From Thalia democratica (lineage: Eukaryota), in NCBI GenBank assembly GCA_965202585.1, contig OZ241834.1, forward strand, positions 8,122,001 to 8,186,000: a DNA stretch of 64,000 nucleotides. Direction: 5' to 3'. The first letter of the stretch is position 1. Every line of letters begins with the position of its first letter. The translations under genes and the position numbers were made by a program. Positions 4,914 to 61,292 of the stretch are shown here, in pieces. Under the pieces are notes generated by a model. The model was given only the letters and a program-made list of their open reading frames with translations, searched no databases and was not told the origin of the DNA.

Positions 4914-4941
4914 ATATATTTATTAATTTAACAAAGTTATA

Positions 4942-5481
4942 ATGTTTCCAAACCTGCAAAATCCCTACTTCTACCTATCAAACGTCGCAAAACCACCAAA
5001 CATCAACCTTCCTTCAACACTTAACCCTCCCGGATTAGGGAGTTCCCCTTTTACGAGCTCCCTAAACTTTCCCCTGCGCAACCCGTTGTTCTTCCAGCCT
5101 CAGGTAATTCCCCCGTTGTGGAACAGCGCCCTGCACAAGTACAACCAGCTGGTGGCGCAACAGAGGAAGGCGCAGGAGGCGGTGCTGAGAAGTTTGTATT
5201 ATGACGTCACACAGCGTAATATTATGCAGCGCAGCGGTTTCGCTCCGAGGCTGAAGAAGTTCAGCCCAGTGCAATTGAGACCGGTCTTTGGCCGACCGAG
5301 GCTTCCCTGCAAGGTTCCCGCGCAATTGTTTCAAAACCGGGGATTTTCCGAATCTTCGCCTACCTCTTCTTCAGTTTCGTCGAAAGCGACAAGTGTTGAT
5401 GTTTCAAGCGGTAAACTGCAAAAGGTGAAGATTGTCGGGAGGAGAACGAAGCAGAAGCAAAACACTCCGTGCAAGTGCAAG
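4942..5481 (+). CDS. Fezf: Fezf-A coding exon 1 (180 codons, Pro/Ser-rich N-terminus to first Cys of finger 1)
   Basis: ATG 4942; ends TGC AAG|gtaaaa; 540 nt, same length as in copy B. Confidence 0.9.
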
Positions 5482-8400
5482 GTAAAAACAAAAATTATAA
5501 TAAAAATACACAGATTTATTCAAAATAGTATAAAACACCTTAAAATAAATCAAAACAATAAACAATATATGAATGCACTATTGTTTTAGTTTGAATGAAA
5601 TGTAAATAATTTCAGGTGCAAAAAAAATATCTCAAATGTCACACAAAAAAGCGATTAAACGTTGATTAATGATGTTTTTGGTGAAACTTTTAACGGGCGT
5701 GCGAAGAAAATTAAAACAAAAGCAAAAGCCTTTTGTAAATACTTTACACTTCTGTGTTTTGCGGTCGCTACTACTTTCGTGCCAGTGATGCTGATTGTGA
5801 CGCATTGTGACGTAACAAACGTTTTGTGAGCTGAGCACCGGCTGGCACGCACCTTTGTTCTTTAATATAATTATAAATTGTCAGACATAGTTTGATCATG
5901 GCCGTGGTTTCAGACAAAAGTTTATATGGTCTAGAAATATTTATGAAAAAAACTATTAAGTTCACAAGATTCAAATAAATATTGCTTTAAATTGTCTTAA
6001 AAAAAAGTTCTAAAGTACAAGTTTGTTTTTTAATACACTACTTTTTGATAGTAACAGTTTGCAAAGTACTTTAGAAAAAAAAACTTTTTACTCCAACGAG
6101 ATCGTGTTGTTCGGATATCTATAAACAAACATCATTGGAAAATTATAACTTCTAAACTATTTGTTTTTCAAAAAACTTCAGTTTACGACCATAACTTAAC
6201 TATCATTTTAAACATTTTCTGTATGTATTCGTGTAGTTTTTTAAAAAACATTTTTATCATAATTTCAAGATATGCGGAAAGGAGTTCAAGGCGCAGTACA
6301 ATCTGACCAGACACATGCCAGTCCACACTGGAGCACGACCTTTCAAGTGCAAGATATGCGGGAAGGGATTCAAGCAGGCCAGCACATTATGTCGTCATAA
6401 AGTCATCCATTCCAAGGTGAATATTTATTTTAAGTTATATGATTTGTATAATATTATGTCGTCATAAGGTCATCCATTCTATGGTTGTAGTAAGTTGTAT
6501 GGTTTACTTGTATGATAACTTGAAAAGTTTTTAAAAAAGTAAAAAATAGTGTTAAATTAGTTATTAATTTGGTACATTGTAAGAGTATTGATAGTTTTAA
6601 AACGTTTGATAAAGTTGTAGCGAAGTAAAATTTTTAACAAATTTAAAGTTTTTGAGTTAACTTAAGTATATCTTGATGACTTGCATGTTATCTTGAGTTT
6701 TAATAACCTTAATTAAACATTAATTTAACTTTGATTGGCAGTTGAAGTTAATGATATTTAGGAAGACAAACACTGTTTTGCATTATCGATTTTTTTATAA
6801 ATAGCTTAAGTGTGCGATATTACAGTGTCCGAAATTATATTACAGCGGTAGTTTTAAACGGTATTTTAAAGTTTTTAGCAAGTTTGCATTGTCAAAGCAA
6901 ACATTAAAATAATATAGCAAACAGCTTAAACCCATCATAAAAAAAAGATCACAACTTATTTTTTAAGATACGAAAAAAAAACGTGAGATTTAAAAACAAA
7001 TTAGTGTGCTTGTTCGCAAGCCGATAAATAATTCTTAAGTGAGAACGGACTTTGGCGATATAAGTATGCGATATAAGTATGCCTTTTAAACTCCCGTGTG
7101 TTTGTTGTGAATCGAAAACACTTGTACATCGGATTACTCCATAAAACACCACTTTACACTGAAGGTGTAAGAAATCAATCGCAATTTCAGCGGACAGATT
7201 GAGCGCCATTGTAAGCCAATCACAGTTGCGATAATTCATTGTAAACCAATCACGTTCCGCGTTAAGCCGCTTTGCCACTAAAGTTCTCGTCCATCTAAGT
7301 GCTTCTGGCTTCCCCTTCAGAGCGCGTTTATGGTAAATTAATCTTCAGTGAAAAGTGATTGCTTTTAAAGTGCGATTCCGTTTTATTTTTTCTATAATTA
7401 TGCAGCAAACGGCAAAGCTGATTTAAAATTCTCTTGATCCGCGTGAAGGTTTCAATTGTGTTTGCAGTTTAAGAAAGCTTTTTGTTTCAAAAATAACTGC
7501 TTGATTGAATGTCGATCTTAAACGCAAAACAAACAGCTTTAAAATCTGAAGCAAGTTTTATCAGGGGTTTTTCTCACGGACAGAAGTGTATAGATACCAC
7601 AAAACACCTGTTTGTATTGAACTTTTAGTTTTTAAGGAGTCAGGTAGTGCATTAAGTAGATTGATTTAAGAAAACTACAAATAAAATTAATGTTAAAAAA
7701 AAACAATAAATCTAATCTACTACTTTGTTATTTTTTTTCGTAAGTGTTTAACTAGCAGCTTTGTTTAAATAAGTATTTACGTCTGCTTACAGGAGATTAA
7801 AATAAAGCCGCTGAACGTTTTTTGAACGCTTTTCTAACTAAAAAATTTTCAACTGAGAATTGTTGTTTACTAACTGTAACACATAACACTTTCTTTATAA
7901 ATTAGATACAAATTTGAAATACTTAAGTATGTAGTTCATAGCTGTTTAAGCACTTTAGCAGACATGTTTTATAGTATTTACTTAACTAATTTTTTAATTG
8001 AACGGAGAATTATTCTAAAGTTATTCTAGCTTATTTAGAAGTACTTTAGTAGTTAGAAAATTAGTGTTTAAAAACCGAAAACATTTTTGTGAAAAAAATA
8101 GTCTTTTATAAACATTTCTAGACAAGTTTGAAAATATTTCATAGAAGTTGACTTTGTATTTAAGTTAAAGATTTAACAACTTAAAAAAAAAGACACTAAA
8201 GAAGAAACTTGTTATAAAACAGTATTTTAAAATACCTAATCAAAGTGTTTTATATAATACTTTATTATACAGGCATTTTTGACTTGTTTATAAAACTCGT
8301 AGATTTATATCAACTTTGGCCTTCATAGCTTGTCATTAGAGAAAAATGAAAAGAATACTTCCAATTCATTACATAAAACCATATGGCGATAATTTATGAG

Positions 8401-11400
8401 CATTCCAAGTATTTATAAAAATGGCGAATTGATCAGTTTCAAAATACTGTATACAATAACAGAGCAATAAAACACCTGATGTAAGATACACCTATATAAC
8501 TCGCAGACTTTACAACTACATTTTATTGCTCTTATTTCATAACTTAAATAATATCTCATTAGTTTTTATTGCTTAGATCCAATAATACTAATCAATAATT
8601 TATTATTTTCTGTCTTAACATACGAGTTAAAGTTTAATTAAAATCGATGTACTGTTCTTCAAGTAGTATAACACAGTTATAAAACACCAAATAAATGATC
8701 AATATATTTTAAATACTACTCATTCAAAATTTAATATTACGATTGATTAATGAACTTAATCTAGTTGTTACGTAATTAGACTTTTTAAACTGTAGAAATC
8801 AATGTAAAGTTAAAAGTAGTATGTATTATAAAAAACAGCTGAAATAAAAATAAAAGGTTTAAAATTTTACACTGAAATACATTTCGAAAAAGTAAAACTA
8901 TTTAGTACAACTTAACAGCTTTTGAAAAGATTGAAGCATTTAAATTTGATTGTTTATAATAAAAATAAGAAACATTAAAAGATACAAAAACTTTTTTTAT
9001 CGCGTTTTAACATTTCAAATAGCAGAATAAAAACTCACTAGCTATTTATTGAAACATATTTTTAGTCTAACATAAATAGTAAAAAAATAAATCTCTCAAA
9101 AATTAAAAAGTATAAGTTTAATCAAAAAATTAAACAATAGAACATGTAATACGGATAACATTTTCAGTACATAATACAATTACTTAATAATCTCAGACAG
9201 TTTATTTTCATTAAAAAAGTAAAAATTGCCCACTTTGTGAATAATAGATAAATACTTTTCAAATTTATATTAATATGTTAATAACTAAAATAAAATAATA
9301 TATTTTGTAAAACTAGTCTAATCGATTGTTTGTACATAAATTTTAGTTGTAAGCTAATTAGAATAAAGAATCTTTTAGATAACCTTATAGAAAGAATTGC
9401 ATTTTCACAATTTATGGAGGTGTTAAATAAACTGTTTATCTAAATAATATTCGAGACTTATTTAGTTAAGATATATACAAAAGTTTTAAATTTAGGTTGA
9501 TGTTAAAGAAAAATTTAGTAAAAAATAAATGTCAGGTCAACCTAATTTGTCGAGTGTTACTTGTTACATTAGCTTATTGTTGATAAACTAAGTCAGTTAG
9601 AAACAGCATTTAGGTAAACTATTTCTTAGTTTAAAATCAAGAACTATATTTTCATTTAAACTTCACAATAACTAGAAACAATTTACAATAAAACAAATCG
9701 ATGAATGAAAAAGTTGTTCTGTTTTCCTCATAGCATAAAACAGTTGTACATATCATCACTTTTACTAAAAAACATATATGATTTAGCAAGGCTTGATCGG
9801 GATTTTACTATGAAATTTATAGCTGAGTTTAACTTCAAAACAAGTGCTTGGTAACGGGTCGGATTTTTAACGGGTTGGCTGCAGTATTAAAGTTTTAGAA
9901 ACTTTTTTAAACGTTATGTTATGCTACTGAGGTAAGGTAACAATACAGTAGTACATTAATAACATTTATACCCTGTCTATAACCCATTTTACCAAAATTT
10001 TTAAACCTTATTTATTGCCCTTAACGAACCATACTCAAAGAAAAATTGAATTAAAAAAAAGTTTCATCAATTATAACTTGAAATTAACAGAAGTTTTTTA
10101 GGAAATCAGATCGCCTTGCTTTTTAAGCCGAAAGCTTTAACGGTTGGAAAAAGTAAATTGCGTTTTGTCGTATAACGTTTACTAAAAATAACAGCTGTAA
10201 ACATAAATTCAAATAATTTTATTATTTAGTTAGCGTGTTTGCTTTTTAACGATTAAATTAATAGCATATTGGTAAAATTTTAACATATAATCATTGATTT
10301 TTGCGTCTCACTAGCAGTTGATCTACTATAATATACTCAGCATAGCTTGCCGACCCATTGTCTAAGACAACTAAATAAAGAAAATATTTTAGTAGTAAAA
10401 ACACATAAAAGTGTTTATCTTTATAAATACCATTTACCTTACCAATATGTATTACGTTATTACGTATTATAATATGTTTACTTACTAACTAACATATACA
10501 CGTAGGAGAGACCTCACAAATGCAAGGTGTGCGGGAAGGCGTTCAACCGTAGCAGCACTTTGAACACTCACATGCGTATTCACACTGGGGACCGCCCCTA
10601 CCAGTGTCAGGTGTGCGGGAAGCGGTTCCACCAGAAGGGCAACTACAAGAACCACTGTTTGACCCACAAAAAGGAAAAAGACTTCAAGTGCAAGATCTGC
10701 GGGAAGGCCTTCCATCAAGTCAGTATTACGTTTTTTTTTTATTAGAATTTTGAAATAAGGCGTTTTGTCAGGTAAAAAAAGTGTTCTGCTTTGTATTCTG
10801 GCTGTTTAAACCTTTTTTATTCCATTAAATTTTGTTCTAGCTTTTTAATTTAAGTTTCCTATGAGCATATGTTAGGACTTGCAATTCAAAAAATAAGCAA
10901 TGATAATTAAAAACTTTGTCTGTCAAAAAATACAATTTTTATGTAGTTTTGTCATGTTTTAGTATGATTAGAACGTAGCCATGCTATTAAATGATGTTTT
11001 TAATAAAAAAGTAAAAAATAAACGGTTAATACTTATACAATATTTATAAAATTATCTTAAATTTTCAACTATAAACTTAAATAACAAACTAACTGAAAAA
11101 ATGTACAATTTATAATATTTATTTTTTTATAAATGCAAAAAATGTAAAAATTGTTAAAATAATACCGCAAATGTTTTTAAATTTAGACAATAAGGAAAAA
11201 ATCACCAGCACTACTAATCTGGTTTGTTAAAAAACGCAAATTACAGATTGTTTCACAAACACAATCGGTCTTTCAAAGTTCCATTTGATTTGTTTGGCAT
11301 GTAACAATAAAAATTTCAAAGCTTGTTTTCATAATAACTAAGAAAGTAAATTAAGATTTATACTGTAGCACCTGGTTTTACAGGTGTTTTAACAAGTCCG

Positions 11401-12119
11401 GTAGTATGATTTTTTTTTTCCAATACTTTTATATAAAGCGTTACCAACTCAACAAAATCTTAAGATTAGATGTAGTTATCAATATAGTTATATTCCTTTA
11501 ATATACCTTTGTGAATTAGTTTTTTAATACTTTGATACTTTTAAAAGTCTTAAAATTAAAGTAGTACTTAGAAATAGAGTTTTTCTTCAAGAAGGTACAA
11601 AATAAATTTTAAGTTGTTAGTGACAATTTTATGTTAAATAACACATATGAAAAATATTTGAAAACGTTAGTTTCATATGTGTTTTCTATCAACGTATTTA
11701 CAAAAGCTTTTGTATCAAACAATAAATCTTTGAACTGAAGTTTTTATTTGCAATAGCCTAAGTTGTTTAAGTAATTTGTACTAAATACGTAAACAAGTAC
11801 TATATAAATTAGTATATATATTTAAGTATTTTATAATCTAATTAACTATATATGAAATTTGATAAACAAAATCAAAACAATTAAGATGTGGAATTAGCTC
11901 AGGTCTTTCGAATAAAATATGAAAACTATGTAAACTTGTATCTAATAAAAACTCACAAAATTTTAGATGTCGAACCTTGGTTTCCACATAAACACTCACC
12001 TTGCAGTTAAACCCTTCAACTGCCACATTTGCGGGAAGGGATTCTGCAGGAACTTCGACCTGAAGAAGCACATTAGAAAGCTACACAAGGATCATGTTGA
12101 GAAGAACCCTTCATCTTGA
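4942..12119 (+). CDS. Fezf: Fezf (Fez/earmuff family) C2H2 zinc-finger transcription factor, copy A, 350 aa; join(4942..5481,6270..6416,10506..10718,11967..12119)
   Basis: All introns are GT-AG phase 0 and the spliced frame is open. Six fingers carry the diagnostic Fezf motifs [45 protein letters not shown] and [15 protein letters not shown]. Confidence 0.95.
5600..5930 (+). promoter_or_regulatory. Conserved non-coding block in Fezf intron 1 (paralogues ~33940-34270, ~60570-60880)
   Basis: GC-rich, retained in all copies; tandem TGACG half-sites (tgacgcattgtgacgtaac). Confidence 0.45.
6270..6416 (+). CDS. Fezf: Fezf-A coding exon 2 (fingers 1-2)
   Basis: tttcaag|ATA TGC GGA ... CAT TCC AAG|gtgaat; [49 protein letters not shown]. 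Confidence 0.95.
6930..7620 (+). promoter_or_regulatory. Conserved non-coding block in Fezf intron 2 (paralogues ~35280-35990, ~58910-59620)
   Basis: High identity in three copies; GGATTA 7131, TAAGCC 7212 and 7263, CCAAT 7216 and 7246. Confidence 0.55.
10506..10718 (+). CDS. Fezf: Fezf-A coding exon 3 (fingers 3-4, start of 5)
   Basis: cgtag|GAG AGA CCT ... CAT CAA|gtcagt; TACTAAC branch-point-like motif just upstream. Confidence 0.95.
11967..12119 (+). CDS. Fezf: Fezf-A coding exon 4 (end of finger 5, finger 6, stop)
   Basis: ttttag|ATG TCG AAC ... TCA TCT TGA; [50 protein letters not shown]. Confidence 0.95.
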
Positions 12120-12856
12120 ATTAACAAACGCAATCCTTGTAAACAAGGATCACAATTTAAGTAAGTAGTCCTGATTTTTCCTGAAGAATGCGTTTAGATA
12201 TTTATATGTAAATCTTTAGTATTTGACATGCTCGAATATTTATGAAGTTCAAAGTTTGAAAAAACTACTTCAATTTAATTTTTTCTGATCAACCCAACTA
12301 CGCAACCCTGACCTCTAAAACAGAGTGTTTGAGTTCTTAAATGTAAGTGTGAATTAAGTTTAGTCCTGAATTTTAAAGTTGATAAATTTAAATGTTTTTA
12401 TATACTTTCCTTTAAAAATGTTTAAAATTAACAAATACAAACAACTTTTTATACTGCTTTAAACTCCGCGTGATTACTAAAAACGAGCAGTTAGTATATT
12501 TTTACAATTCTTTTGTGAAGAACTCATGCAAAAACTAAAATGCATATTTACCATCAAAAAGTTTAGTTCTTTTGGTACAGATTCTAAATTTATAACGATT
12601 ATATTCTATATATGAGCTATACATATAAAACTGTCACTTTTTTGTTTTATTGCATTTTTATTTTTAATGTACTTAGTGTTGTACTTGCTCAATATTTTTA
12701 TATTGAAACTCTTTTTAACAAGCGTAGTTTGTATCTAATGATTTTTTTTAAAACTATTTTCAATGCTTTGCTACTTTTTAACTTTTACAAAAATTACAGA
12801 CGCAGTAGCGTTGTCACATACAAATTCAAATAACAAAACTTTCTTTAAGTTGAAAA

Positions 12857-12862
12857 AATAAA
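12857..12862 (+). terminator. Candidate Fezf-A polyadenylation signal (also 41301-41306 in B and 53481-53486 minus in C)
   Basis: AATAAA followed by tttcgaaac, conserved in all three copies ~740 nt after the stop in A; weak evidence in such AT-rich DNA. Confidence 0.35.
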
Positions 12863-12879
12863 TTTCGAAACAACTAAAT

Positions 12880-13210
12880 ATAGACCGCAATCAAGTTCAA
12901 TTTTCCGCCCCATCAAAAATAAACCAACACGAAAAACCAAAAAACAAAAGAAGGCAGGTGTTTAATTAAATGTCGTTATCTCCCCTGTCGCTCCGATGCA
13001 GCCGACCCGGTGTAATCGCGTTTCACGGCACCCCCACGACGTTTCCGTGGTAACAGGTGCGCGGGTTGACAGGGTTGACGAGGTTTCTTTGGGGCCCCGA
13101 GATGATCAGTCAGATGCGAGACCTGCCCGTGAAATCCGTGCAAAATTTCTGTCGCTTGACGGTTTTGACTTTTGTGCTTTTTGTTTCATCTCGTTCAATG
13201 ATGTGCGATT
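12880..13210 (+). promoter_or_regulatory. GC-rich conserved block downstream of Fezf (paralogues ~41325-41650, ~53140-53465) with X-box, GC box and E-boxes
   Basis: Most CpG-rich non-coding stretch; indels between copies break any reading frame; CCGCCCC, CAGGTG twice, GTTTCCGTGG(T/C)AAC. Confidence 0.6.
13041..13054. promoter_or_regulatory. RFX X-box-like site, copy A
   Basis: GTTTCCGTGGTAAC versus consensus GTTNCCATGGNAAC. Confidence 0.55.
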
Positions 13211-13695
13211 AAGCTATTGTTTTATTTTCTTTGAAAATCTTTTGTTTAAACTATTTTCTCCTTATATTTTTGATCATTGATTAAAGTTAAACAGTTTGTA
13301 AAAATTAGAATTAACTACAATTTAACATCCAAATTAACGTTTAACGCAATTAACATTTAAACTTATAACATATTAGGTATAAATTATGTATTTTTAAATT
13401 ATAAATTTTTAAATAATTTACTTTTTTCGTTTAAAAAGTTCTAAGCTGTAATTTAAGATATGCTCTTTTAGTAATTAGTACCATTTATCACTACCTAAAT
13501 AATAAATATTCAAGTTGTTGACAAATATTTAAATTTGAAATTAAAAACATAATCTAGTGATATTAAATAAACATAGTTATATTAAATATTTTTCACTTTA
13601 ACTAATTAAATTATTACTCCAGGATCCATTAGCATAAAAAAAATAATCGTACGAATTTTACTAAACGATTATTAAACTATGTTCACACTTTCTAG

Positions 13696-44915: not shown

Positions 44916-45249
44916 ACAACAAGCAAAATGCGTCATATAAAACATACTAAAATAAATAATGTTTAGACGACGTTTCTAAAACTATTAAGATCAAAATGTA
45001 ACTGTTTTAATTTTTTTTCTCTTAAGTTTAAACCTAAGTGAGTATTTTTTATATAGTTTAAAATGTTTTATGTAGTCTAGTTTTAAAACATTGTAACATC
45101 TTTGCTGAGACATATTTCACAATAAAGTAAACATTATTAAATTCTAAATTTATCTTTATTTTGTTATATCATACTACTTATCTCGCTTTAAGTTTACGCT
45201 GTTTCAAGAGACTATTTAAATTTTAAGAGAAAACTGTAAAAGCTACGAT

Positions 45250-46792: not shown

Positions 46793-46849
46793 AGTCTATG
46801 AACAAAAATTTTAATGAAAAAGAGTCTATGAACAAAAAATTTAATGAAA
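46793..46849. repeat. 30-bp tandem duplication
   Basis: agtctatgaacaaaaa(t/a)tttaatgaaa twice with period 30. Confidence 0.8.
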
Positions 46850-47127
46850 GCAGTTTTTTAAAAGAAAACATTAAATAAGTTTAAATAAGCATTAAATTTG
46901 ATAAGTATGACTGTCATAAAACAAATTTCTTAGAAATTTACCAACAAAATTAGTTTGATTTTTTTTGTAAGTTTTATTTCATCATTAACTTACTTATTTG
47001 AAGTACAAAAACAAGCCTTAAACACAATGACATAACTAAATAAAAAACTATCATTCTCTAGAATTCTTATGAAAAAGCTTTAAAGATAAGTTACACAGCT
47101 AACAAGTAATTTTTAAGTTATAATAAC

Positions 47128-50100: not shown

Positions 50101-52639
50101 TTCTTCAATAATGTCAACTAATTATTGCTAACCATATGACCTAGAAAGATTTAACTATATATGTTATGTAATCTAAATTAAAAAGAAAAGTTTAAAATGT
50201 ATAAAAAGTTAGACTATGTTCATGTGAAAAATTTGATTCTTTAAGCCAAGCATTTTTTAAATAAATAAATTAAAAAAGAACGATCACATATAAATAATTA
50301 GTTAAAGATTAACGTTAGTTTTAGTTTGACACACTACTCTTTTTTCAACTTGATTTTTTTAATCACTACATTTTTCTAGTACTTGCTTAAGCCAATTTGC
50401 TAGTTTTTTTCACACATAAGTATCAAAAGTATCATGATGGTCAGGAGTCGTGTGGGGTGCAGTTTTGGAGCAAATTCTCTGTAACAGCTGACCACAGTCG
50501 GCGCTATTAAACTGCAATTGGCATCTTTTTATTCGTTCTCTTCTCTCAATGACTTTTGTGTTTATAAACGCTCCATTCCTTTAAGATGCTTGCTCGTGCT
50601 TGCTATTGTTAAGCCAAGTTGTAGCAGTTTTAAGTTTTTCTATTGTTTGATTAGCAATGCCATGTATATTTTAGCAGTTGGCTTTTAACCGTGGGTTTAC
50701 TTAAGTCGTGTTAGCACTTGTTGTGATTAGTTAATTAAAGCAACTTGTTTTATTAGTTATTTATGGCCATGGTTTCATTTTATTGTGAGTTTCTATGCTC
50801 ACATTTTAATGTCAATACACTTTTCATTAACAGACTCGATTTACGTTTAAAAGAAATATAAACTAGTTGTTAAGTTCTTAAGTACTTAGTAACAAGTAAG
50901 TAAAGTATAGTTAATTGTAAATAAGTTAACATAAGTATATAAGTATATAAGTAAGTAATTAACGCAGTGTAGAGTTATAAGCAAACACTGGACGCGCGTT
51001 AGTAATAGCTCAACCTAAAAAATATAAATCTTTTTATAATGTTATAAAACAGTTAAAAATATTATATTTCAAATTTAATTTCATTAACAAACAATTTGTT
51101 GTAATTGTAATGTTTTTATTTTTTAAATTTAGTTTTAAAAGATATAAAATTAAGGGTTTATAAAATATTATTAAAGTTTCCGCACTTCCTAAAAAACATA
51201 CCATGCGTCGTCACAGGAAGTCAAAAATTTTCAAACATACTACGTAGATACGTACGTTTTCAAATAGCCTCTTTTAGGTTTAATTAATTTAAATTTTCTT
51301 TTTCTTCTATAAAGAACAATATCGGTCATTTATATTTTCATCTCTTATCTTCTTAAACCTACGATATACGATATACTTTCTATTAAAAAAATATGAAATT
51401 CTCAAAAACGCACAATAAATCAAATACAATTAAAACAAACATGTAGAGCATTTTATCAGGTATCGTCTTGTTATTGACGTCATATCCGGCATCGAGCAGA
51501 TTCTCAATTGTTTCCACGTGATCGTTTTTCGCGGCAAAATGTAATGGAGAAACACCGCAATGTTCCGCTATGTTGATTTTCTTCATTCTCAGCAGAATCA
51601 TCACTACCCTGTAAAAATTTGACTTTATTCAAACGGTGTTACAATTATGATACCAAATTAAAAGTTAAACACTATAAGTACATAGTATTGTACTAAATTT
51701 TATTTTTACAAGTTAATATACTAGTTCAATTTGTAAACTTAATTTTTGTTATAGAGCAACTTAATTAACTTTTTACGAAAAAAGTTAATTTTTATCAAAA
51801 AGATAAAACATTAAATTAAACTCATAAATAACAACAAACTTATCTATTTGCTTCAATTTAAAATTTGCTTTTTTGTTACTTCAACCTTTCCTAAAACAAT
51901 TTAAAAAGAAAACAATAATAATTTTACTTATTCACCTGTGAGAACAAGGTCTTTAATGTAATACAAACCTCTGATGTCCATGGGAGACGGCGACGTGTAT
52001 AGGGAGAACCCCGTCGCAGTTCTCGGTGTGGGGGTCAGCCCCTCTTGCGAGAAGAGTTTTCACACAATCAGAGTGTCCCTCCTTGCTAGCTTCGTACAAT
52101 GGGGTGGCACTCTTGGTCTTTGACTGCACATTGAAGTCTCCGTCTGTTTGAAAAACTAAGTAGTAAATAAATTCTTGGTTTATGTATTTCATAGCTGTTT
52201 CATTAACAAAAATCACTTTGAATGAATAAAACAAAAAGTTTGCGAACTAAAAAATTGTTCTTTAAATTATTTATATTAAACTATAAAACCTCTTACAAAA
52301 CATAAAAAAAAACTTAAAATTTAAATCAAGATTTTTGTTTACCTTAAGCATTTTAGTTCAAATTAGATAGAATATTTTAATATCCTCAATAAATATCTTT
52401 AAAATCTTCTTTAAATCTTTTAAGTTTTGGCTCAATGTAAAATCAAATATCTTAGTCAAAAGTATTTTATTAAATTTTATTATTATATCTACTTCTATCC
52501 ATTCAATAGTAACTGTTACTATTATCAATTGATTGTTCATTGTGCCCACAAGTGGCAGCAGTTAAAATAAGGGAAGCACCGAAACCATCCCGTGCATTCA
52601 CACCCATCCCATTTGACATGAGAAACTCCAACAGTAACC
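47128..52639 (-). pseudogene. Asb2/14/15: ASB2/14/15-like gene fragment, copy C; exons 52520..52639, 51969..52143, 51452..51608, ~50436..50700 (decayed), 50005..50140, ~48590..48700, 47906..48068, 47128..47267
   Basis: Same exons as copy A plus VDIIEEFLINGADVNTSFGDKQTNFSPSIAFALRDLKL, and a SOCS exon GNPRILKQLCRLKIPEAIS...FLGYQYI*. Lesions: 7-nt deletion in the first exon, donor GT>AT at 51451, 1-nt deletion in the 50005-50140 exon, lost donor at ~48590. Confidence 0.85.
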
Positions 52640-53288
52640 CTGAGAAAAAAAAAGGTTAATTAATTATTTTTTGACTAAAAGTCTATACTTTATTAAAACA
52701 ATACTTATTTAAATTATGGAGCATTACTTAATAAAAACAAATACTTCGGCTTGACAGAAAAGTATCTGAAGATCGTTTGAACTATATTTGTTTACAAAAA
52801 TTCATTAGATTAAATTTTCTAATTTTGATTTAGATACTTGTCAACAAAATATTTATAATTTAAGTAGCGATAATAAATAGTTAATGTATGTTAATAATTA
52901 CTAGTAGAGTAAATCTTAAATCATAGCTAATATGTTTTTTAAAGAAAAAAGTAAAGTTCTTTTAAATTTCTATTTAGAGGAAAACATAACCTATGCGTGA
53001 CATTGTTTATGTTTAAATTTTGTAGTTGAGTTTATTTTTTACAAACTGTTTAACTCTATGTGATAATCAATAACGAAAGGAGAAAAAAATTTAAAGAAAG
53101 ATATAATCAAAGAAAATAAAACAATAGCTTTATCGCACATCATCGAACGAGATGAAACAAAAAGCACAAAAGTCAAAACCGTCAAGCGACAGAAACGTCG
53201 CACGGATTTCACGGGCAGGTCTCGCATCTGACTGATCATCTCGGGGTCCCGCGAAGAAACCTCGTCAACCCTGTCAACCCGCGCACCT

Positions 53289-53302
53289 GTTGCCACGGAA
53301 AC
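53289..53302. promoter_or_regulatory. RFX X-box-like site, copy C
   Basis: GTTGCCACGGAAAC (reverse complement of GTTTCCGTGGCAAC). Confidence 0.55.
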
Positions 53303-53740
53303 GTCGCGGGGGTGCCGTGAAACGCGATTACACCGGGTCGGCTGCATCGGAGCTACAGGGGAGATAACGACATTTAATCAAACACCTGCCTTCTTTTGTG
53401 TTATGATTGTTTATGTTTTTTTTTTTGTGATGGGGCGGAAAATTGAAATTGATTACGGTCTATATTTAGTTGTTTCGAAATTTATTTATTTTTAATTTAA
53501 AGAAAGTTTTGTTATTTGTTAATTTATATGAAAACGCTACTGTGTCTCTTATTTTTGTAAAAGTTAAAAAGAAGCAAACGTAATGAAAAAGAGTTTAAAA
53601 AAATATCATTAGATACAAAATATGGTTGTTAAAAAAAAGTTTCAACATAAAAAGAATGGGCAAAATATCTAAACGCGTTCGTCAGGAAAAATCAGGACTA
53701 CTGAGTTAAATTCTTGTTAACCAGGATTGCGTTAGTTGAT

Positions 53741-53893
53741 TCAAGATGAAGGGTTCTTCTCAACATGATCCTTGTGTAGCTTCCTGATGTGCTTCTTCAG
53801 GTCGAAGTTCTTGCAGAATCCCTTGCCGCAAATGTGGCAGTTGAAGGGCTTCACCGCAAGGTGAGTGTTCATGTGGAAACCAAGGTTCGACAT
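53741..53893 (-). CDS. Fezf: Fezf-C exon 4 (intact, R328K in finger 6)
   Basis: ttttag|ATG TCG ... TGC AAG AAC TTC ... TCT TGA. Confidence 0.9.
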
Positions 53894-55138
53894 CTAAAAT
53901 TTTGTGATTTTTTATTAGGTACAAGTTTACGTAGTTTTCATATTTTATTTAAAAGAGCTGAGCTAATTCCACATCTCAAATTTTATGATTTTTCCTATTA
54001 AATTTAAAATATAACTAATGATAATTTAAAATAATTTCAATATATATATTAATTTATATTATACTTGTTTATGTATTTATCAAAAATTACTTAAACCAAT
54101 TAGGCTATTGCAAGTAATAATATTAGTTCAAATGTTTATTGTTTGATACGAAAGCTTTTGTAAATACTTTGATATAAAACATATATGAAATTAACGTTTT
54201 CAAATATTTTTTATATGTGTTATTTAACATTAAATTTTCACCAACAACTAAAGAACTATTTTGTACCTTTTTGAAAAAAACTCTATTCCTAAGTACTACT
54301 TTGATTTTATGACTTTTAAAAGTATCAAATGCATTAAAAAAGTTAAATCACAAAGGTATATTAAAAAAATGTATTGATACCTATATCTAGTCTTAAGATT
54401 TTGTTGAGTAAGGTAACGCTTTATATGAAAGAATTGGAAAAAATAACACTCAACAATTTACCGGACACCACCTGTAAAACCAGGTGCTCCAGTAGAATCT
54501 AAATTTACTTTCTTAGTTGTTATGAAAACAAGTTTGTTTTTTGTTACATGCCAAACAAATCAAATGGAACTTTGAAAGGCCGCTTGTGTTTGTGAAACAA
54601 TCTGTAATTTTGCGTTTTATTAAAAAGCCAGATTAGTAGCGCCTGTGAGTTTTTCCTGTTGTCTAAACTTCAAAACATTTGCGGTATAATTTTAACTGTA
54701 TTTACATAGTATAAAAAAATTAATATGAGAAATTTTACAATTTTATCAGTTAGTTTGTTTTTAAAGTTTATAGTTGGAAATTTAAACAAATTTTATAAAT
54801 ATTGTATAAGTATTAACCGTTTATTTAGATTTTATATACTTTTTATTTGTAAACATCGTTTAATAGCATAGCTACGTTCTAATCACACTAAAACATGACA
54901 AAACTACATAAAAATCGTACTTTTCTACCAACAAAGTCTTTTAATTATCATTGCTCATTGCTTTGTTAATTGCGAGTTCTAAAATATGCTGATAGGAAAC
55001 TTAAATTAAAAAGCTAGTAAAAATTTTCTTGGAATAAAAAAGATTTAAACAGCCAAAATACAAACCGCTACACTTTTTTTACCTGATGAAACGCCTTAGT
55101 TTAAAATTCTAGTCAAGAAAAAAAACAGTAATACTGAC

Positions 55139-55351
55139 CTGATGGAAGGCCTTCCCGCAGATCTTGCACTTGAAGTCCTTTTCCTTCTTGTGGGTCAAAC
55201 AGTGGTTCTTGTAGTTGCCCTTCTGGTGGAACCGCTTCCCGCACACCTGACACTGGTAGGGGCGGTCCCCAGTGTGAATACGCATGTGAGTGTTCAAAGT
55301 GCTGCTACGGTTGAACGCCTTCCCGCACACCTTACATTTGTGAGGTCTCTC
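55139..55351 (-). CDS. Fezf: Fezf-C exon 3 (intact)
   Basis: cgtag|GAG AGA ... CAT CAG|gtcagt; protein identical to A and B. Confidence 0.9.
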
Positions 55352-55456
55352 CTACGTAATACATATTGGTTAGTAAGTAAATTTGATTTATAAAAAGGTA
55401 ATAATTTTATGCAAATTTTACTATCAAAATGTTTCCTTTATTTAGTTGTCTTAAAC

Positions 55457-56180
55457 TAGGGGTGGGCAACGTACGGCCGGCGGGCTGAATCCGGCCCGCA
55501 GAGTAAAAATGACCGGCCCCTTGACCGTTTTTTTTTAAATTAAAGGGATCGGGGACGCAAATGAAAACGACCGGCCCGCGAGCAAAGTTTCAGGCCCGCA
55601 AAGGGTCAATATTACAAAATTCCTTCAAAAGTTTTTATAAACTTTTACAAACCAAAACTGTATGAGTTTGACTTTAAAAAATGCTTAAAATGACTTTATA
55701 AATTAATATGTACTAATACACCATTTTGTCCTAATATTTTGTGTAGTTCTAACTTAGTTGGAATATCTTTTTGTCAAATTACCCCAAGCAAAGTGTTTTT
55801 TTTTAAGTTCGATATTTTACATACCTACCTTTGTCAATTTCAATATCAATTCTAGTTATAGACATCATTTAAACATTTGACACGTTTCAATCTACATTTC
55901 TAAGTTGTAAAACTTGAGAAAGTTTTGTGAGCTTGAAGGACTCAAAAAAATGATCAACTGTATCCATAAAATTAGATTCCGGCCGGATCCAAAACTTTTA
56001 TTTAATTTAGAATCCGACGAGATCTGGTTCTCGACTTAAAATTATTATCCAGTCGGATTCGAATCTAAAAATCCATTTTTTTGCTAAACCCGGTAAATCA
56101 CTAATTTGAAATGCTCCGGCCCGCAAAAGACTAAATTTTCCGGATCCGTCTCGTTGATTGAAAAAAGTTGCCCACCCGTA
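55457..56180. mobile_element. Non-autonomous hAT-type element, 724 bp, inserted in Fezf-C intron 2
   Basis: TIRs TAGGGGTGGGCAAC ... GTTGCCCACCCGTA; TSD TCTTAAAC (55449-55456) / TCTTAGAC (56181-56188). Copies A (~10360) and B (~38760) have the single empty site gtctaaga. Repeated CCGGCCCGC motifs inside. Confidence 0.92.
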
Positions 56181-59100
56181 TCTTAGACCATTTGTCGGCA
56201 ATCTATGTTGAGTATATTATAGCAGATCAGCTGCTACTGAGACGCAAAATACAATAATTGTATGTTAAAATTTTACCAATATGCTATTAATTTAATCGTT
56301 AAAAAGCAATCACGCTAACTTATTAATAAAATTATTTAAATTTATGTTTACAGCTGTTATTTTTAGTATACATTATACGGCAAAACGCAATTTACTTTTT
56401 CCAACCGTTAAAGCTTTCGGCTTAAAAAGCTAGGCAATCTGGTTTCCTAAAAAAGTACTGTTTATTTTAAGTTATAATTGATGAAAGTTATTTTTTTATT
56501 GAATTTTCTTTGGGTATAGTTGGTTAAGGGTAACAGTTCAGGTTTAAAAATTTCGGTAAAATGGGTTATAGATAGGGTTTTAATGTTATTGATGTACGAC
56601 TGTATTGTTACCTTACCTCAATAGCCTAACATAACGTATAAAAAAGTTTCCAAAATTTTAATACTGTAGCTAATCCGTTAAAAATCCGACCCGTTTCCAA
56701 GCCCTTGTTTTGAAATTTAGCTTAGCTACAAAAGCCTTAGTAAAATCCCGATCAAGTTTTAAAACATTGCTAAATCATATATGTTTTTTAGTAAAAGTGA
56801 TGATATGTACAGCTGTTTTATGCTATGAGGAAAACAAAACAATTTTTGTATTCATCAATTTTTTTCACACATAGCTAGTAAATTGTTTCTAGTTATTTTA
56901 AATTTTAAATATATAAATAGTTCTTGATTTCAAACTAAGAATAGTATACCTAAAAGCTGTTTCTAACTGACTTTGTTTATCAACAATAAGCTAATGTAAC
57001 AAGTAATACTCGACAAATTAATTTGAGTTGTCATTACTTTTTCACTAAATTTTTAAAAATTAATCAGCCTAAATATAAAGTTTTTGTATAAACATAAAAG
57101 TAAATAAGTCTCGAATATGATTTAAACAAACAGTTTATTTAGGACCTCAATAGATTATGAAAATGCAATTCTTTCTATAAGGTTATCTAAAAAAATATTT
57201 ATTCTAATTAGCTTACAACTAAAATTTATGTACAAACAATCGTTTAGACTTGACATACTAATATAAATTTAGAAAGTATTTATCTAATATTCACAAAGTA
57301 GGCAATTTTTACCTATTTGATAAAATTAAACTGTCTGAGATTATTAAGTAATTGTATTATGTACTGAAAATGTTATCCGTATTACACGTTATATTGTTTT
57401 TTTTTAATAAAACTTGTACTTCTTAAGTTTTCAGAAGTTAACTTTTTCAGTTTTTTCGTTTGACTAAAAATATGTCACGACAAATACCTTGTAAGTTTTT
57501 ATTCTGCTTGTTGAAGTTTTAAAACGCGATAAAAAAAAGTTGTTGTATCTTTTAGTGTTTCGTATTTTTGAATATAAATAATCAAATTTAAATGCTTCAA
57601 TCTTTTCAAAAGCTTTTAAGTTGTACTTTTTTTTTTACTTTATTTAAATGTATTTCAGTGTAAATTTTTAAGTCTTTATTTTTATTAAACTGTTTTTTAT
57701 ATTACATACTACTTTTAACTTTACGTTGATTTCTACAGTTTGAAAAATCTAATTACGTAACAACTAGGTTAAGTTCATTAATCAATCGTCATATTAAATT
57801 TTAAATGAGTAGCAGTTAAAATATATTGATCATTTATTTGATGTTTTATAACTGTGTTATATTACTTAGCTAACAGTACATCGATTTTAATTAAAATCTA
57901 ACTCGTATGTTAAGACAGAAACTAATAAATTATTGATAATTATTCCTGGATCTAATGGAACAAAAACTAATAAAATATTATTTTAGTTATGAAATAAAAG
58001 CAATAAAATGCAGTTGTAAAGTCTGCGAGTTGTATAGGTGTATCTTACATCAGGTGTTTTATTGCTCTGTTATTGTATACAGTATTATGAAACTGATCAA
58101 TTCGCCATTTTTATAAATACTTGGAATGCTCATAAATTATCGCCATATGGTTTTATGTAATAAATTTGAAGTATTCTTTTCATTTTGCTATAATGACAAG
58201 CTATAAAGGCCAAAGTTGATATAAATCTACGAGTTTTATAAGCAAGTCATAAAAGCCTGTATAATAAAGTATTGTATAAAACATTTTGATTCGGTATTTT
58301 AAAATACTGTTTTATAACAAGTTTCTTCTTTATTGTCTTTTTTTTAAAGTTGATAAAGTTTTGACTTGAATACAAAGTCAACTTCTATGAAATATTTTCA
58401 AACTTGTCTAGAAAATTTTATAAACGACTATTTTTTTACCAAAATTTTTCCGGTTTTTAAACACTAATTTTCTACCTACTAACGTACTTCTAAATAAGCT
58501 AGACTTACTTTAGAATAATTCTCCGTTCAATTAAAAAAATAATTAATCAAATACTATAAAAAATGTTTGCTAAAGTGCTTAAACAGCTATGAACTACATA
58601 CTTTAGTATATCAAATTTATATCTAATTTATAAAGAAAGAGTTATGTGTTACAGCTAATAAGCAACCATTCTCATTTGAAAAAATTTTTAGTTAGTAAAG
58701 CGTTCAAAAAACGTTCAGCGGCTTTGTTTTTATCTCCTGTAAGCTGACGTAAATACTAACAAAAACAAAACTGTTAGTTAAACATTTAAGAAAAAAATAA
58801 CAAAATAGTAGATTAGATTAATTACTCTTTTAAAACTTTAATTTTTTTTGTAGTTCTGTTAAATCAATCTACTTAATGCACTAAATGACCCCTTAAAAAC
58901 TAAAAATTCAACACAAACAGGTGTTTTGTGGTATCTATACACTTCTGTCCGTGAGAAAAACCCCTGATAAAACTTGCTTCAGATTTTAAAGCTGTTTGTT
59001 TTGTGTTTAAGGTCGACATTCAATCAAGAAGTTATTTTTGAAACAAAAAGCTTTCTTTAAACTGCAAACACAATTAAAACATTCACGCTGATCAAGAGAA

Positions 59101-60020
59101 TTGTAGAGTAATCAGCTTTGCCGATTACTGTGCAATTATAAAAAAAAATAAAACAGAATCGCACTTTAAAAGCAATCACTTTTCACTGAAGATTAATTTG
59201 CTATAAACGCGCTCTGAAGGGGAAGCCAGAAGCACTTAGATGGACGAGAACTTTCGTGGCAAAGCGGCTTATCGCGGAACGTGATTGGCTTACAATGAAT
59301 TATCGCAACTGTGATTGGCTTACAATGGCGCTCAATCTGTCCGCTGAAATTGCGATTGATTTCTTACGCCTTCAGTGTAAAGTGGTGTTTTATGGAGTAA
59401 TCCGATGTACAAGTGTTTTCGATTCAAAACAAACACACGGGAGTTTAAAAGGCGGGCGTTATGTAAATCCGCCGCATATTTATATTGCCAAAGTCCGTTC
59501 TCACTTAACAATTATTTATCGCCTTTGCGTACAAGCACACTAATTTGTTTTTAAATCTCACGTTTTTTTTCGTATCTTAAAAAATAAGTTGTGATCTTTT
59601 TTTTATGATGGGTTTAAGCTGTTTGCTATATTATTTTAATGTTCGTTATCGACAGTGCAAACTTGCTTAATACTTTAAAATACCGTTTAAAACTACCGCT
59701 GTAATATAATTTCGGACACTGTAATATCGCAGACTTAAGCTATTTATAAAAACTTCGATAAAGCAAAACAGTGTTTGTCTTCCTCAATATCATAAACTTC
59801 AACTGGCAACCAAAGTTAAATTAATGTTTAATAAAGGTTGTTAAAACACAAGATTACATACAAATCATCAAGATATATATTATACATTAAGTTAACTCAA
59901 AAACTTTATATTTATTGACAAATTTACCTTGCTACAACTTTATCAAACGTTTTGAAACTATCAATAATCTTACAATGTACCAAAGTAATAATTAATTTAA
60001 CACTATTTTTTACTTTTTTA

Positions 60021-60209
<189 letters not shown>

Positions 60210-60893
60210 CTAGAAATTATGATAAAAATGTTTGTTAAAAAAATTACACGAATACATACAGAAAATGTTTAAAATGTTTGATAGTTAAGTTATGGTCGTA
60301 AACAGTAGTTTATGAAAAAAAAATAGTTCTGAAGTTATTAATTGCCAATGATGTTAGTTTATAGATATCCGAACGAAACGATCTTGTTGGAGTAAATATT
60401 TTATTTTTCTAGAGTACTTTGTAAACTGTTTCTATCAAAACATAGTGTATTAAAAAACAAACTTGTACTTTAGAACTTTTTCTTTTTAAGACATTTCAAA
60501 GCAATATTTATTTGACTCTTGTGAACTTAAAAATTTTGTTCAAAAATATTTCTAGACCACATAAACTTTTGTCTGAAACCACGACCATGATCAAACTGTG
60601 TCTGACAATTTATTATTATATTAGAGAACAAAGGTGCGTGCCAGCCGGTGCTCAGCTCACAAAACATTTGTTACGTCACAAAGTGTCACAATCAGCATCA
60701 CTGGCACGAAAGCAGTAGCAGCCGTAAAACACAGAAGTGTGAGGTGTTTACAAAAGGCTTTAGCTTTTGTTTTTTTTTTCTTCGCACGCCCTTAAAAGTT
60801 TCACCCAAAACATCATTAATCGCTTTTCTGTGTGACATTTGAGATATGAAGTACTTTTTTTTTGCACCTGAAGTTATTTGCATTTCTTTCAAA

Positions 60894-61292
60894 CTAAAAC
60901 AATAGTGCATTCGTATGTTGTTTGTTGTTTTGAGTTATTTTAAGCAAGACCGGTCTCAATTGCACGGAACTGAACTTCTTCAGCCTCGGAGCAAAACCAC
61001 TGCGCTGCATAATATTACGCTGTGTGACGTCATAATACAAACTTCTCAGCACCGCCTCCTGCGCCTTCCTCTGTTGCGCCACCAGCTGGTTGTACTTGTG
61101 CAGGGCGCTGTTCCACAACGGGGGAATTACCTGAGGCTGGAAGAACAACGGGTTGCGCAGAGGGAAGTTTAGGGAGCTCGTAAAAGGGGAACTCCCTAAT
61201 CCGGAAGGATTCAGTGTTGAAGGAAGGTTGATGTTTGGTGGCTTTGCGACGTTTGACAGGTAGAAGTAGGGATTTTGCAGGTTTGGAAACAT
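60894..61292 (-). CDS. Fezf: Fezf-C truncated exon 1 (codons 1-116 fused to intron-derived tail)
   Basis: Junction gagaccggtcTTG|cttaaaataactc at 60945/60944 joins exon-1 sequence to intron-1 sequence. Confidence 0.85.
   Translation of the reverse strand: MFPNLQNPYFYLSNVAKPPNINLPSTLNPSGLGSSPFTSSLNFPLRNPLFFQPQVIPPLWNSALHKYNQLVAQQRKAQEAVLRSLYYDVTQRNIMQRSGFAPRLKKFSSVQLRPVLLKITQNNKQHTNALLF

What the first reader, a model, noticed from the sequence alone, without database searches (positions are those of the whole stretch)
4942..61292. Local cluster of three Fezf genes (two intact, one altered) in a direct-plus-inverted arrangement
Seen: three complete zinc-finger exon sets at 4.9-12.1 kb (+), 33.3-40.5 kb (+) and 61.3-53.7 kb (-). 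A and B differ at only 7 of 350 residues, with a clear synonymous excess. Established: Fezf is usually single-copy in invertebrates, and the two vertebrate genes are unlinked paralogues. Inference: a lineage-specific tandem expansion of an anterior-neural patterning factor, with both full copies under purifying selection.
Basis: partly seen in the sequence, partly recalled or inferred. Interest (0 to 1): 0.75.

Follow-up and report, generated by a model that had tools for sequence, protein, structure and literature searches.

The report
Eleven-copy tandem array of Fezf genes
The three Fezf brain-patterning genes in this window are the last three units of a roughly 300-kb row of eleven copies in a marine planktonic animal, a gene that is normally single-copy in invertebrates; at least six copies still look functional.

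Summary
The window holds three four-exon, six-zinc-finger genes: A and B (+) and C (-). A and B are intact and differ at 7 of 350 residues (33 synonymous and 8 non-synonymous differences, dN/dS 0.06). C has lost 250 bp, including the end of exon 1 and its splice donor.

The window shows only the end of a larger structure. The same contig carries 11 units with a 26-29 kb period, ten direct and one inverted, over about 299 kb. These are the genome's only Fezf-type genes.
- Six copies are intact.
- One has ATG changed to ATA at the start codon.
- Four are broken.

The Fezf assignment rests on fingers 3-5. They are 73-75% identical to FEZF1, FEZF2 and fly erm, against 61% to Gfi and 58% or less to other zinc-finger proteins. 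No N-terminal "Fezf box" was found.

Identity between copies is mosaic (99.7% in some stretches, about 85% in others), which points to ongoing sequence exchange. Short-read k-mer depth from two samples is 7-12 times single-copy depth over a conserved block of the unit, which argues against an assembly artefact. Expression and long-range read support could not be tested.

This is a real lineage-specific expansion of a known gene, larger than reported.

The parts
1..13204 (+). Repeat unit 9 (copy A): the segment shared with units B and C, made up of upstream region, gene and 3' flank. The full unit runs on to about 28327.
   Evidence: Self-blast and unit-versus-array blast.
4942..5481 (+). Copy A (F9) exon 1: N-terminal 180 aa, ending inside finger 1.
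   Evidence: ORF and GT donor. No homolog elsewhere in the genome outside the array.
6270..6416 (+). Copy A exon 2: rest of finger 1 plus finger 2.
   Evidence: AG/GT boundaries and zf-C2H2 match.
10506..10718 (+). Copy A exon 3: fingers 3 and 4 and the first half of finger 5.
   Evidence: 73-75% identical to FEZF1, FEZF2 and erm.
11967..12119 (+). Copy A exon 4: rest of finger 5, finger 6 and the stop codon.
28328..41654 (+). Repeat unit 10 (copy B). It is cut short at 41654, 849 bp into the 3' flank.
   Evidence: The conserved 3' block is truncated at 265 of 311 nt.
33253..33792 (+). Copy B (F10) exon 1.
34608..34754 (+). Copy B exon 2.
38863..39075 (+). Copy B exon 3.
40331..40483 (+). Copy B exon 4.
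41655..46961 (.). Unique 5.3-kb junction spacer between truncated unit B and the inverted unit C.
   Evidence: No match elsewhere in the array. Covered by unitigs at single-copy-like depth of 33-55 in three runs from two samples.
46962..64000 (-). Repeat unit 11 (copy C), inverted. It continues beyond the window end to at least contig position 8,192,700.
60946..61292 (-). Copy C (F11) exon 1, truncated. The first 347 nt are present; a 250-bp deletion then removes the last 193 nt of exon 1, the donor and 57 nt of intron. Read-through meets a stop after 17 further codons.
   Evidence: Three-way alignment and translation.
60063..60209 (-). Copy C exon 2, intact.
55139..55351 (-). Copy C exon 3, intact.
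53741..53893 (-). Copy C exon 4, intact, with one private R-to-K change in finger 6.
12940..13250 (+). GC-rich conserved block about 0.8 kb downstream of the stop codon. It occurs once per unit and nowhere else in the genome, at 94-100% identity. The other copies in the window are at 41388-41654 (+) and 53090-53402 (-).
   Evidence: No Rfam match and fold z-score -1.7.
2742..3641 (+). Non-coding block upstream of copy A that is conserved among paralogs as strongly as the exons (mean pairwise identity 0.94-0.97, against 0.85-0.90 around it). It is a candidate promoter or enhancer.
   Evidence: Conservation profile over 10 copies. No open frame in the block.
6842..7641 (+). Conserved block inside intron 2 of copy A (0.94-0.98), a candidate intronic enhancer.

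Best explanation
The window holds the distal end of a real tandem array of about 299 kb. Eleven units of 26-29 kb lie on one contig, ten head-to-tail and the last inverted. Each unit carries one four-exon gene for a six-finger C2H2 transcription factor of the Fezf type, and these are the genome's only Fezf-type genes. The array most likely grew by repeated unequal crossing-over between units, with an inverted duplication at the distal end. It now evolves by birth and death: six copies are intact, one has lost its start codon and four are broken. It also shows continuing gene conversion or unequal exchange between non-adjacent units. The zinc-finger domains of the intact copies are almost identical, so they should bind the same DNA motif. 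Copies A and B (and F4, F5, F9 and F10 generally) are held by purifying selection. The expansion therefore most likely acts through dosage, or through division of expression among copies whose flanking DNA has diverged by 10-15% outside a few conserved blocks. Shown here: the structure, the copy states, the mosaic identity, the selection signal and the Fezf-type fingers. Inferred: the mechanism of growth, the function of the multiple copies and the neural role.
For: - Eleven exon-3 matches at 97-100% aa identity lie every 26-29 kb on one contig. The next-best hits in the genome are 57% or lower.
- Exon 1 and the 3' conserved block occur only in these 11 units.
- All four exons were mapped in every unit.
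- Lesions: F2 has a TAG stop plus a 1-nt insertion; F7 has a TAG stop plus a 1-nt insertion; F8 has a 23-nt deletion; F11 (copy C) has the 250-bp deletion; F3 has ATG changed to ATA.
- The whole unit is repeated, not just the gene. The array reaches from 7,893,800 to 8,192,700.
- Mosaic identity: A is 99.3-99.8% identical to F4, F5 and F6 from +2.1 to +6.1 kb, but 85-88% identical just upstream, where B is the closest copy at 96%.
- Selection: intact pairs have mean dN 0.018 and dS 0.125. A versus B gives 33 synonymous and 8 non-synonymous differences. Private changes in intact copies total 22 synonymous and 18 non-synonymous, against about 1:3.7 expected under neutrality.
- Fezf type: the top nine Swiss-Prot hits for exon 3 are all FEZF1, FEZF2 or erm at 73-75% identity over 71 of 71 residues, aligned to the same fingers. 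Gfi scores 61% and other zinc-finger proteins 58% or lower. The protein has six C2H2 fingers.
- Reads: unitigs of the conserved unit block have k-mer depth 300-620, against 33-55 for the unique spacer, in three runs from two samples.
- No gap characters occur in the window or in the 200 kb fetched.
Against: - No long reads were available, so the order and orientation of units, and the B-C inversion joint in particular, rest on the assembly alone (one search returned only 300-670 bp unitigs).
- No RNA run holds the locus, so it is not shown that any copy is expressed.
- Broken copies also give low pairwise dN/dS (0.04-0.28), because conversion and recent breakage blur the signal. An intact ORF therefore does not prove function. 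F6 has 2 synonymous and 8 non-synonymous private changes, which looks neutral.
- No Fezf-box or Eh1-like motif was found.
- About 20 kb of units 8 and 9 and both flanks of the array could not be read.
Confidence: 0.75

Rival explanations
1. The array is real, but only one or two copies do the job. The other 'intact' copies are young, effectively neutral duplicates (a copy-number-variable array) that have not yet acquired disabling mutations and are kept similar by gene conversion from the working copy.
For: - Four or five of the 11 copies are already dead.
- F6 has 2 synonymous and 8 non-synonymous private changes, including changes at conserved finger positions. F1 has C327F and N329S in finger 6.
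- Conversion tracts at 99.7% identity are as young as the allelic difference seen between samples (roughly 0.2-1.7% over the X3 pieces).
- Metagenomic exon-1 contigs at 95-97% identity match none of the 11 copies as an allele would, which hints that the repertoire varies.
Against: - Private changes in A, B, F4 and F5 taken together are 16 synonymous and 6 non-synonymous, far from the neutral ratio of about 1:3.7.
- Six ORFs of 350-359 aa stay open although dS among them reaches 0.16.
- Non-coding blocks are conserved in all units.
Confidence: 0.2
2. Assembly artefact: two haplotypes, or a collapsed and re-expanded repeat, were laid out in tandem, so the true locus has one or two genes.
For: - The finding comes from a single assembly.
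- No spanning long reads could be examined.
- Some units are 96-99% alike over 17-22 kb.
Against: - There are eleven distinct sequences, each with its own lesions and indels. Divergence of 1-15% in a mosaic pattern cannot come from two haplotypes.
- Unitig depth over the conserved block is 7-12 times that of the adjacent unique spacer in three runs, including a second sample.
- There are no gaps.
Confidence: 0.04
3. These genes descend from Fezf but no longer act as Fezf. Having lost the N-terminal co-repressor motif, the family has taken on a new lineage-specific role, and the array reflects that new role rather than brain patterning.
For: - No Fezf-box or Eh1-like motif occurs in exon 1, in the 5 kb upstream or anywhere in the intergenic unit.
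- All metagenomic relatives share the [12 protein letters not shown] start (one carries a 10-residue N-terminal extension), and this genome has a stop five codons upstream.
- Identity to Fezf is at the low end of the more-than-75% reported for the family (PMC2942887).
- According to another agent's note, this genome also holds a very large fast-evolving zinc-finger array.
Against: - The fingers are nearly invariant among copies rather than diversifying.
- No other Fezf candidate exists in the genome to carry the ancestral role.
- The motif consensus was recalled from memory, and a far-upstream or trans-spliced 5' exon cannot be excluded without RNA.
Confidence: 0.15

Closest known systems
Fez family zinc-finger proteins (vertebrate FEZF1 and FEZF2, Drosophila erm/earmuff, amphioxus Fezf)
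   Same: Both have six C-terminal C2H2 fingers. Fingers 3-5 are 73-75% identical and aligned residue for residue. This is the only such locus in the genome. There are introns inside the finger domain, a feature reported only for vertebrates and Ciona (PMC2942887).
   Different: Here there are eleven linked copies, against one in the invertebrates surveyed, including amphioxus, and two unlinked genes in vertebrates (PMC2942887 and general knowledge). No N-terminal Fezf box was found. The protein is short at 350 aa, against 429-611 aa for the Swiss-Prot entries.
Gfi-1, Gfi-1b and pag-3 (the SNAG-domain zinc-finger family related to Fezf)
   Same: Six C2H2 fingers, and the next-best family in the fold and sequence search.
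   Different: Identity is only 56-61% over the same 71 residues. No SNAG motif (MPRSFLV-type, recalled from memory) is present at the N-terminus, which reads [10 protein letters not shown].
Lineage-specific tandem arrays of developmental transcription factors that evolve by birth-and-death and gene conversion (for example the rodent Rhox and Obox clusters and the DUX4 array; from general knowledge)
   Same: A multi-copy head-to-tail array of a regulator gene, a mix of intact and dead copies, and sequence exchange between units.
   Different: Those arrays are homeobox genes with reproductive or early-embryo roles in mammals. Here the gene is a deeply conserved neural zinc-finger gene, and its DNA-binding domain stays essentially unchanged.
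Other tandem arrays noted in this same genome by the scan (a row of four EVI1-like genes; an array of about 460 seven-finger genes)
   Same: Same genome and the same style of local head-to-tail gene amplification (notes not checked here, apart from the many C2H2 hits on contigs C7 and C9).
   Different: The Fezf copies keep theirs.

Membership tests
Fezf (Fez family zinc-finger transcription factors) | Six C2H2 zinc fingers at the C-terminus | tested here: met
   Six C-x2-C...H-x3/4-H units can be read in the 350-aa products of A and B. Pfam zf-C2H2 matches exons 2, 3 and 4.
Fezf (Fez family zinc-finger transcription factors) | Finger domain highly similar to Fezf orthologs (typically more than 75% aa identity, PMC2942887) and closer to Fezf than to any other family | tested here: met
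   Only exon 3 (71 aa, fingers 3-5) was tested. It is 73-75% identical to FEZF1, FEZF2 and erm at the homologous fingers; Gfi scores 61% and other zinc-finger proteins 58% or lower. This is borderline on the 75% figure, and no full-domain tree was built.
Fezf (Fez family zinc-finger transcription factors) | N-terminal 'Fezf box' co-repressor motif, reported in all bilaterian Fezf studied (PMC2942887) | tested here: inconclusive
   No FSIxxI[LM]-like motif occurs in exon 1, in the 5 kb upstream or in the 21-kb intergenic part of the unit on the gene's strand. Relatives share the same MFPNL start. The consensus was recalled from memory, and an unseen 5' exon cannot be excluded without RNA. Non-bilaterian Fezf genes also lack the box.
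Fezf (Fez family zinc-finger transcription factors) | Orthology supported by a phylogeny of the finger domain | not tested
   No named full-length Fezf sequences could be obtained. The representative search was swamped by poly-zinc-finger proteins, and the word-index search returned only unnamed metagenomic exon-1 fragments.
Fezf (Fez family zinc-finger transcription factors) | Expression in the anterior neural territory | not testable with these tools
   No RNA run holds the locus.
Tandem gene array maintained by unequal exchange and gene conversion | Head-to-tail units of regular period on one uninterrupted sequence | tested here: met
   Exon-1 starts are spaced 25.6-29.1 kb apart across ten direct units. 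The whole unit is repeated. No N occurs in the DNA that was read.
Tandem gene array maintained by unequal exchange and gene conversion | Mosaic similarity between non-adjacent units (a different nearest relative along the unit) | tested here: met
   In the sliding-window identity profile, A is nearest to B upstream (96%) and nearest to F4, F5 and F6 within the gene (99.3-99.8%), while A-B identity there is 90%.
Tandem gene array maintained by unequal exchange and gene conversion | Copy number supported by raw reads independent of the assembly | tested here: inconclusive
   Unitig k-mer depth is 300-620 over the conserved block against 33-55 over the unique spacer, in three runs from two samples. 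This fits about 7-12 copies. The tool warns that summed contig depth is not a copy number, and no spanning reads were available.

The most novel reading that the evidence does not exclude
A pelagic tunicate has turned its single, deeply conserved Fezf gene into a copy-number-variable array that evolves in concert. The proteins lack the Fezf box, and several intact copies carry diverged regulatory DNA and are expressed in different cell types or life-cycle stages (for example the solitary and aggregate generations). A related species, represented by the 16-member metagenomic cluster with at least two forms 8-10% apart, would carry a parallel array. That would make this a recurrent, selected amplification of a brain-patterning factor rather than a one-off duplication.
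Probability: 0.15. Interest if true: 0.7.

Novelty: new variant of a known kind. Interest (0 to 1): 0.5.

Why it matters
Fezf is one of the most conserved anterior-brain regulators in animals. It is treated as single-copy outside vertebrates, and its abutting expression domain with Irx is used to argue homology of brain regions across phyla (PMC2942887, PMC3856589). As of 2013 its expression in tunicates was described as unknown (PMC3856589). An 11-copy array with six or more intact genes, nearly identical DNA-binding domains, diverged flanks and apparently no co-repressor box is a natural test case. It can show how a dosage-sensitive developmental regulator tolerates amplification, and whether copies divide up expression. 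It also warns anyone annotating this genome or its relatives that 'the' Fezf gene is a family of near-identical paralogs and pseudogenes, which short reads and probes will confuse. The surprise is tempered because other agents' notes report further tandem arrays in this genome.

Tried and rejected
- A full-library HMMER search with exon 3 was useless for naming the family. The ranking sums over many fingers, so long poly-zinc-finger proteins filled all 150 rows.
- A word-index protein search with the exon-1 open frame found only four unnamed clusters of short ENA metagenome contigs. No annotated ortholog was found, so no named full-length Fezf could be aligned and no family tree was built.
About 20 kb of units 8-9 and both flanks of the array were therefore not read. 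F8's exons were recovered from loci returned by the genome search.
- An upstream coding exon and a Fezf-box or Eh1 motif were sought in open frames and by motif scan and not found.
- Rfam found nothing in the window. The GC-rich 3' block folds no better than shuffled sequence (z = -1.68), so an RNA-gene reading was dropped.
- Read laying on the B-C junction returned only short unitigs. It cannot show that any molecule crosses 41654 or 46962, and it gives no genome-wide depth baseline.
- No RNA runs were listed, so expression, the true 5' end and any use of a cryptic donor in copy C are untested.
- I checked whether the 16-member metagenomic cluster proves an array in a relative. The five contigs fetched each come from a different sample, so two forms 8-10% apart suggest paralogs but are not proof.
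- I rejected the idea that metagenomic P0151 is an intact allele of broken F7. Its best match is B, at only 96.5%.
Full report
**1. What the window shows**

The window is AT-rich (23-32% GC) and has no gaps. A self-comparison finds one long segment three times:
- 1-13204 (+);
- 28328-41654 (+), about 90% identical to the first;
- 64000-52361 (-), 87-90% identical, with weaker similarity continuing to 46962.

Each copy carries the same four-exon gene, and every junction is GT-AG.
- Copy A: 4942-5481, 6270-6416, 10506-10718, 11967-12119.
- Copy B: 33253-33792, 34608-34754, 38863-39075, 40331-40483.
- Both encode 350 aa with six C2H2 fingers (Pfam).
- They differ at 7 residues and 41 of 1053 nt. 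That is 33 synonymous and 8 non-synonymous differences, dS 0.165, dN 0.0097.
- Copy C (-) keeps exons 2-4 intact but has a 250-bp deletion. It removes the last 193 nt of exon 1, the donor and 57 nt of intron 1, and read-through stops after 17 codons.

**2. The window is only the end of the structure**

The window is contig C10:8,122,001-8,186,000 of an 802-Mb assembly. Searching the whole genome with exon 3 gives 11 matches at 97-100% aa identity, all on C10 between 7.912 and 8.177 Mb and spaced 26-29 kb apart. Ten are on the + strand and the last is on the - strand. The next-best hits are ordinary C2H2 genes at 57% or lower. Exon 1 and a GC-rich block downstream of the stop codon also occur once per unit and nowhere else.

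I fetched 200 kb of the array and mapped all four exons in every unit. I number the copies F1 to F11, with A = F9, B = F10 and C = F11.

| Copy | State |
|---|---|
| F1 | Intact; 359 aa, with a 27-nt in-frame tandem insertion |
| F4, F5, F6 | Intact |
| F9 (A), F10 (B) | Intact |
| F3 | Start codon ATG changed to ATA; an R-to-C change in finger 3 |
| F2 | TAG at the last codon of exon 3; 1-nt insertion in exon 4 |
| F7 | TAG stop and 1-nt insertion in exon 1 |
| F8 | 23-nt deletion in exon 1 |
| F11 (C) | The 250-bp deletion |

The lesions are documented. The whole 26-29 kb unit is repeated, not only the gene. Unit-derived sequence reaches from 7,893,800 to 8,192,700, about 299 kb. Unit B is cut short at window 41654. 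A unique 5.3-kb spacer (41655-46961) separates it from the inverted unit C.

**3. Is the gene Fezf?**

No annotated ortholog could be retrieved by sequence search. I therefore folded exon 3 (71 aa, fingers 3-5) and searched Swiss-Prot models with Foldseek. Because this is a rigid, repetitive domain, the sequence-identity column is the informative part of the result.
- The top nine hits are all FEZF1, FEZF2 or Drosophila erm. They are 73-75% identical over all 71 residues and aligned to the homologous fingers.
- Gfi-1 and Gfi-1b reach 61%.
- Other zinc-finger proteins reach 58% or lower.

Irimia et al. 2010 (PMC2942887) define the family by two features: six fingers with typically more than 75% identity, and, in bilaterians, an N-terminal "Fezf box". 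The fingers fit that definition at the low end of the range. The box was not found:
- Exon 1 starts [12 protein letters not shown], with a stop five codons upstream.
- The metagenomic relatives share the same MFPNL start; one has a 10-residue extension before it.
- No FSIxxI[LM]-like motif exists in the 5 kb upstream or anywhere in the intergenic part of the unit.

The motif consensus is from my memory, and an unseen 5' exon cannot be excluded without RNA, so I score this feature as inconclusive. Because the genome has no other candidate, these genes are best read as its Fezf co-orthologs, apparently without the box.

**4. How the array evolves**

Among the six intact copies, mean dN is 0.018 and mean dS is 0.125, a ratio of 0.14. 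The finger exons are the more constrained part (dN 0.011).

Changes private to one copy are the cleaner signal. The neutral expectation is about 1 synonymous to 3.7 non-synonymous.

| Copies | Synonymous | Non-synonymous |
|---|---|---|
| Intact (all six) | 22 | 18 |
| A | 6 | 1 |
| B | 6 | 2 |
| F6 | 2 | 8 |
| Broken (four) | 14 | 20 |

F6 looks neutral, so an open frame alone does not prove function.

Identity between units is strongly mosaic. A is 99.3-99.8% identical to F4, F5 and F6 from +2.1 to +6.1 kb of the gene, yet only 85-88% identical to them just upstream, where its nearest relative is B at 96%. That is the signature of gene conversion or unequal exchange between non-adjacent units. 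The youngest tracts (about 0.3% divergence) are no older than the difference seen between two sequenced samples in the unique spacer, roughly 0.2-1.7%. Pairwise divergence therefore does not date the duplications.

Several non-coding blocks are as conserved among paralogs as the exons. They are candidate shared regulatory elements:
- 2742-3641, upstream of the gene;
- 6842-7641, inside intron 2;
- 12940-13250, downstream of the stop codon.

**5. Relatives**

Exon-1 homologs exist only as short marine-metagenome contigs.
- One cluster (P0151, three members) is 95-97% identical at the nt level but is not an allele of any of the 11 copies. Its best match is B at 96.5%.
- A second cluster (P0152, 16 distinct members) is 85-89% identical at the nt level in gapped alignment (about 91% ignoring gaps). 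Its members share three small indels that none of this genome's copies has.
- That second cluster contains at least two forms that are 8-10% apart, including in the upstream DNA.

In an exon-1 tree, the second cluster groups apart from this genome's copies, which form a poorly resolved bush. Within that bush, F5+F6 and F1+F4+F11 are supported groups. This fits expansion or homogenisation after the species split. It also hints, without proving it, that a relative has several copies too.

**6. Is it an assembly artefact?**

Eleven sequences, each with its own lesions and with 1-15% mosaic divergence, cannot be two haplotypes. Public runs holding the locus are short-read DNA kept as unitigs.
- The unique spacer is covered at depth 33-55 in three runs from two samples.
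- Unitigs of the conserved unit block have depth 300-620, about 7-12 times higher.

This agrees with about 11 copies, although the tool warns that such depths are not copy numbers. Long-range order and the inversion joint remain supported by the assembly only.

**7. Context and limits**

Another agent's note calls this genome a salp-like pelagic tunicate and reports other tandem arrays of regulator genes. I did not verify the taxon. The marine-metagenome holders are consistent with a planktonic animal.

Literature searches found no report of a multi-copy Fezf array. A 2013 review states that Fezf expression in ascidians was unknown (PMC3856589).

Expression, the true 5' end and the function of the multiple copies are untested.

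**Verdict**

This is a real, lineage-specific tandem expansion of a known gene family.

Noticed in passing
window 14127-14369, 14600-14839, 16180-16365 (+); 51956-52246, 51386-51628, 47898-48080 (-): Exons of an ankyrin-repeat gene lie downstream of Fezf on the same strand and were duplicated along with it. The first exon is found in 7 of the units that were read. The copy in inverted unit C scores better against Pfam Ank than the copy in unit A, so C's may be the working gene and the others decaying fragments.
   Followed up: partly
window 6453-6479 (and the same place in F8, L041): The last 27 nt of exon 2 (ATTATGTCGTCATAA[A/G]GTCATCCATTC) are repeated 37 nt into the following intron at 96% identity. 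This resembles the 'exon-echo' copies of splice junctions that another agent noted elsewhere in this genome.
   Followed up: no
window 21454-22474: A dispersed repeat of about 1 kb with internal inverted repeats (21461-21738 against 22459-22181) has dozens of copies on many contigs at 75-85% identity. It is a foldback or MITE-like element inserted in the intergenic part of units F3, F5, F6 and A.
   Followed up: partly
window 12940-13250; 41388-41654; 53090-53402: A GC-rich block (45-56% GC in a 27% GC region) occurs once per unit and nowhere else in the genome, at 94-100% identity among units. It has no Pfam or Rfam match and no significant RNA fold. It is possibly a 3'-UTR or enhancer element of the Fezf genes.
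   Followed up: partly
window 60946-60950 (-), copy C: After the deletion, an in-frame GT (CCG|GTCTTG) at codon 114 could in principle splice to exon 2. That would give a protein lacking residues 115-180 and the first cysteine of finger 1. The donor is weak and there is no RNA evidence.
   Followed up: no
L044, L049-L052 (ENA marine metagenome contigs): A related taxon's Fezf exon 1 occurs as 16 distinct protein variants in metagenomes. At least two DNA forms are 8-10% apart, including the upstream sequence, which is possibly a parallel multi-copy locus in another species.
   Followed up: partly
genome contigs C7 at about 62-66 Mb, and C9 at about 2-3 Mb and 38-39 Mb: The exon-3 search hit well over a hundred C2H2 zinc-finger ORFs clustered in a few megabase-scale regions. 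This is consistent with very large zinc-finger gene arrays elsewhere in this genome.
   Followed up: no
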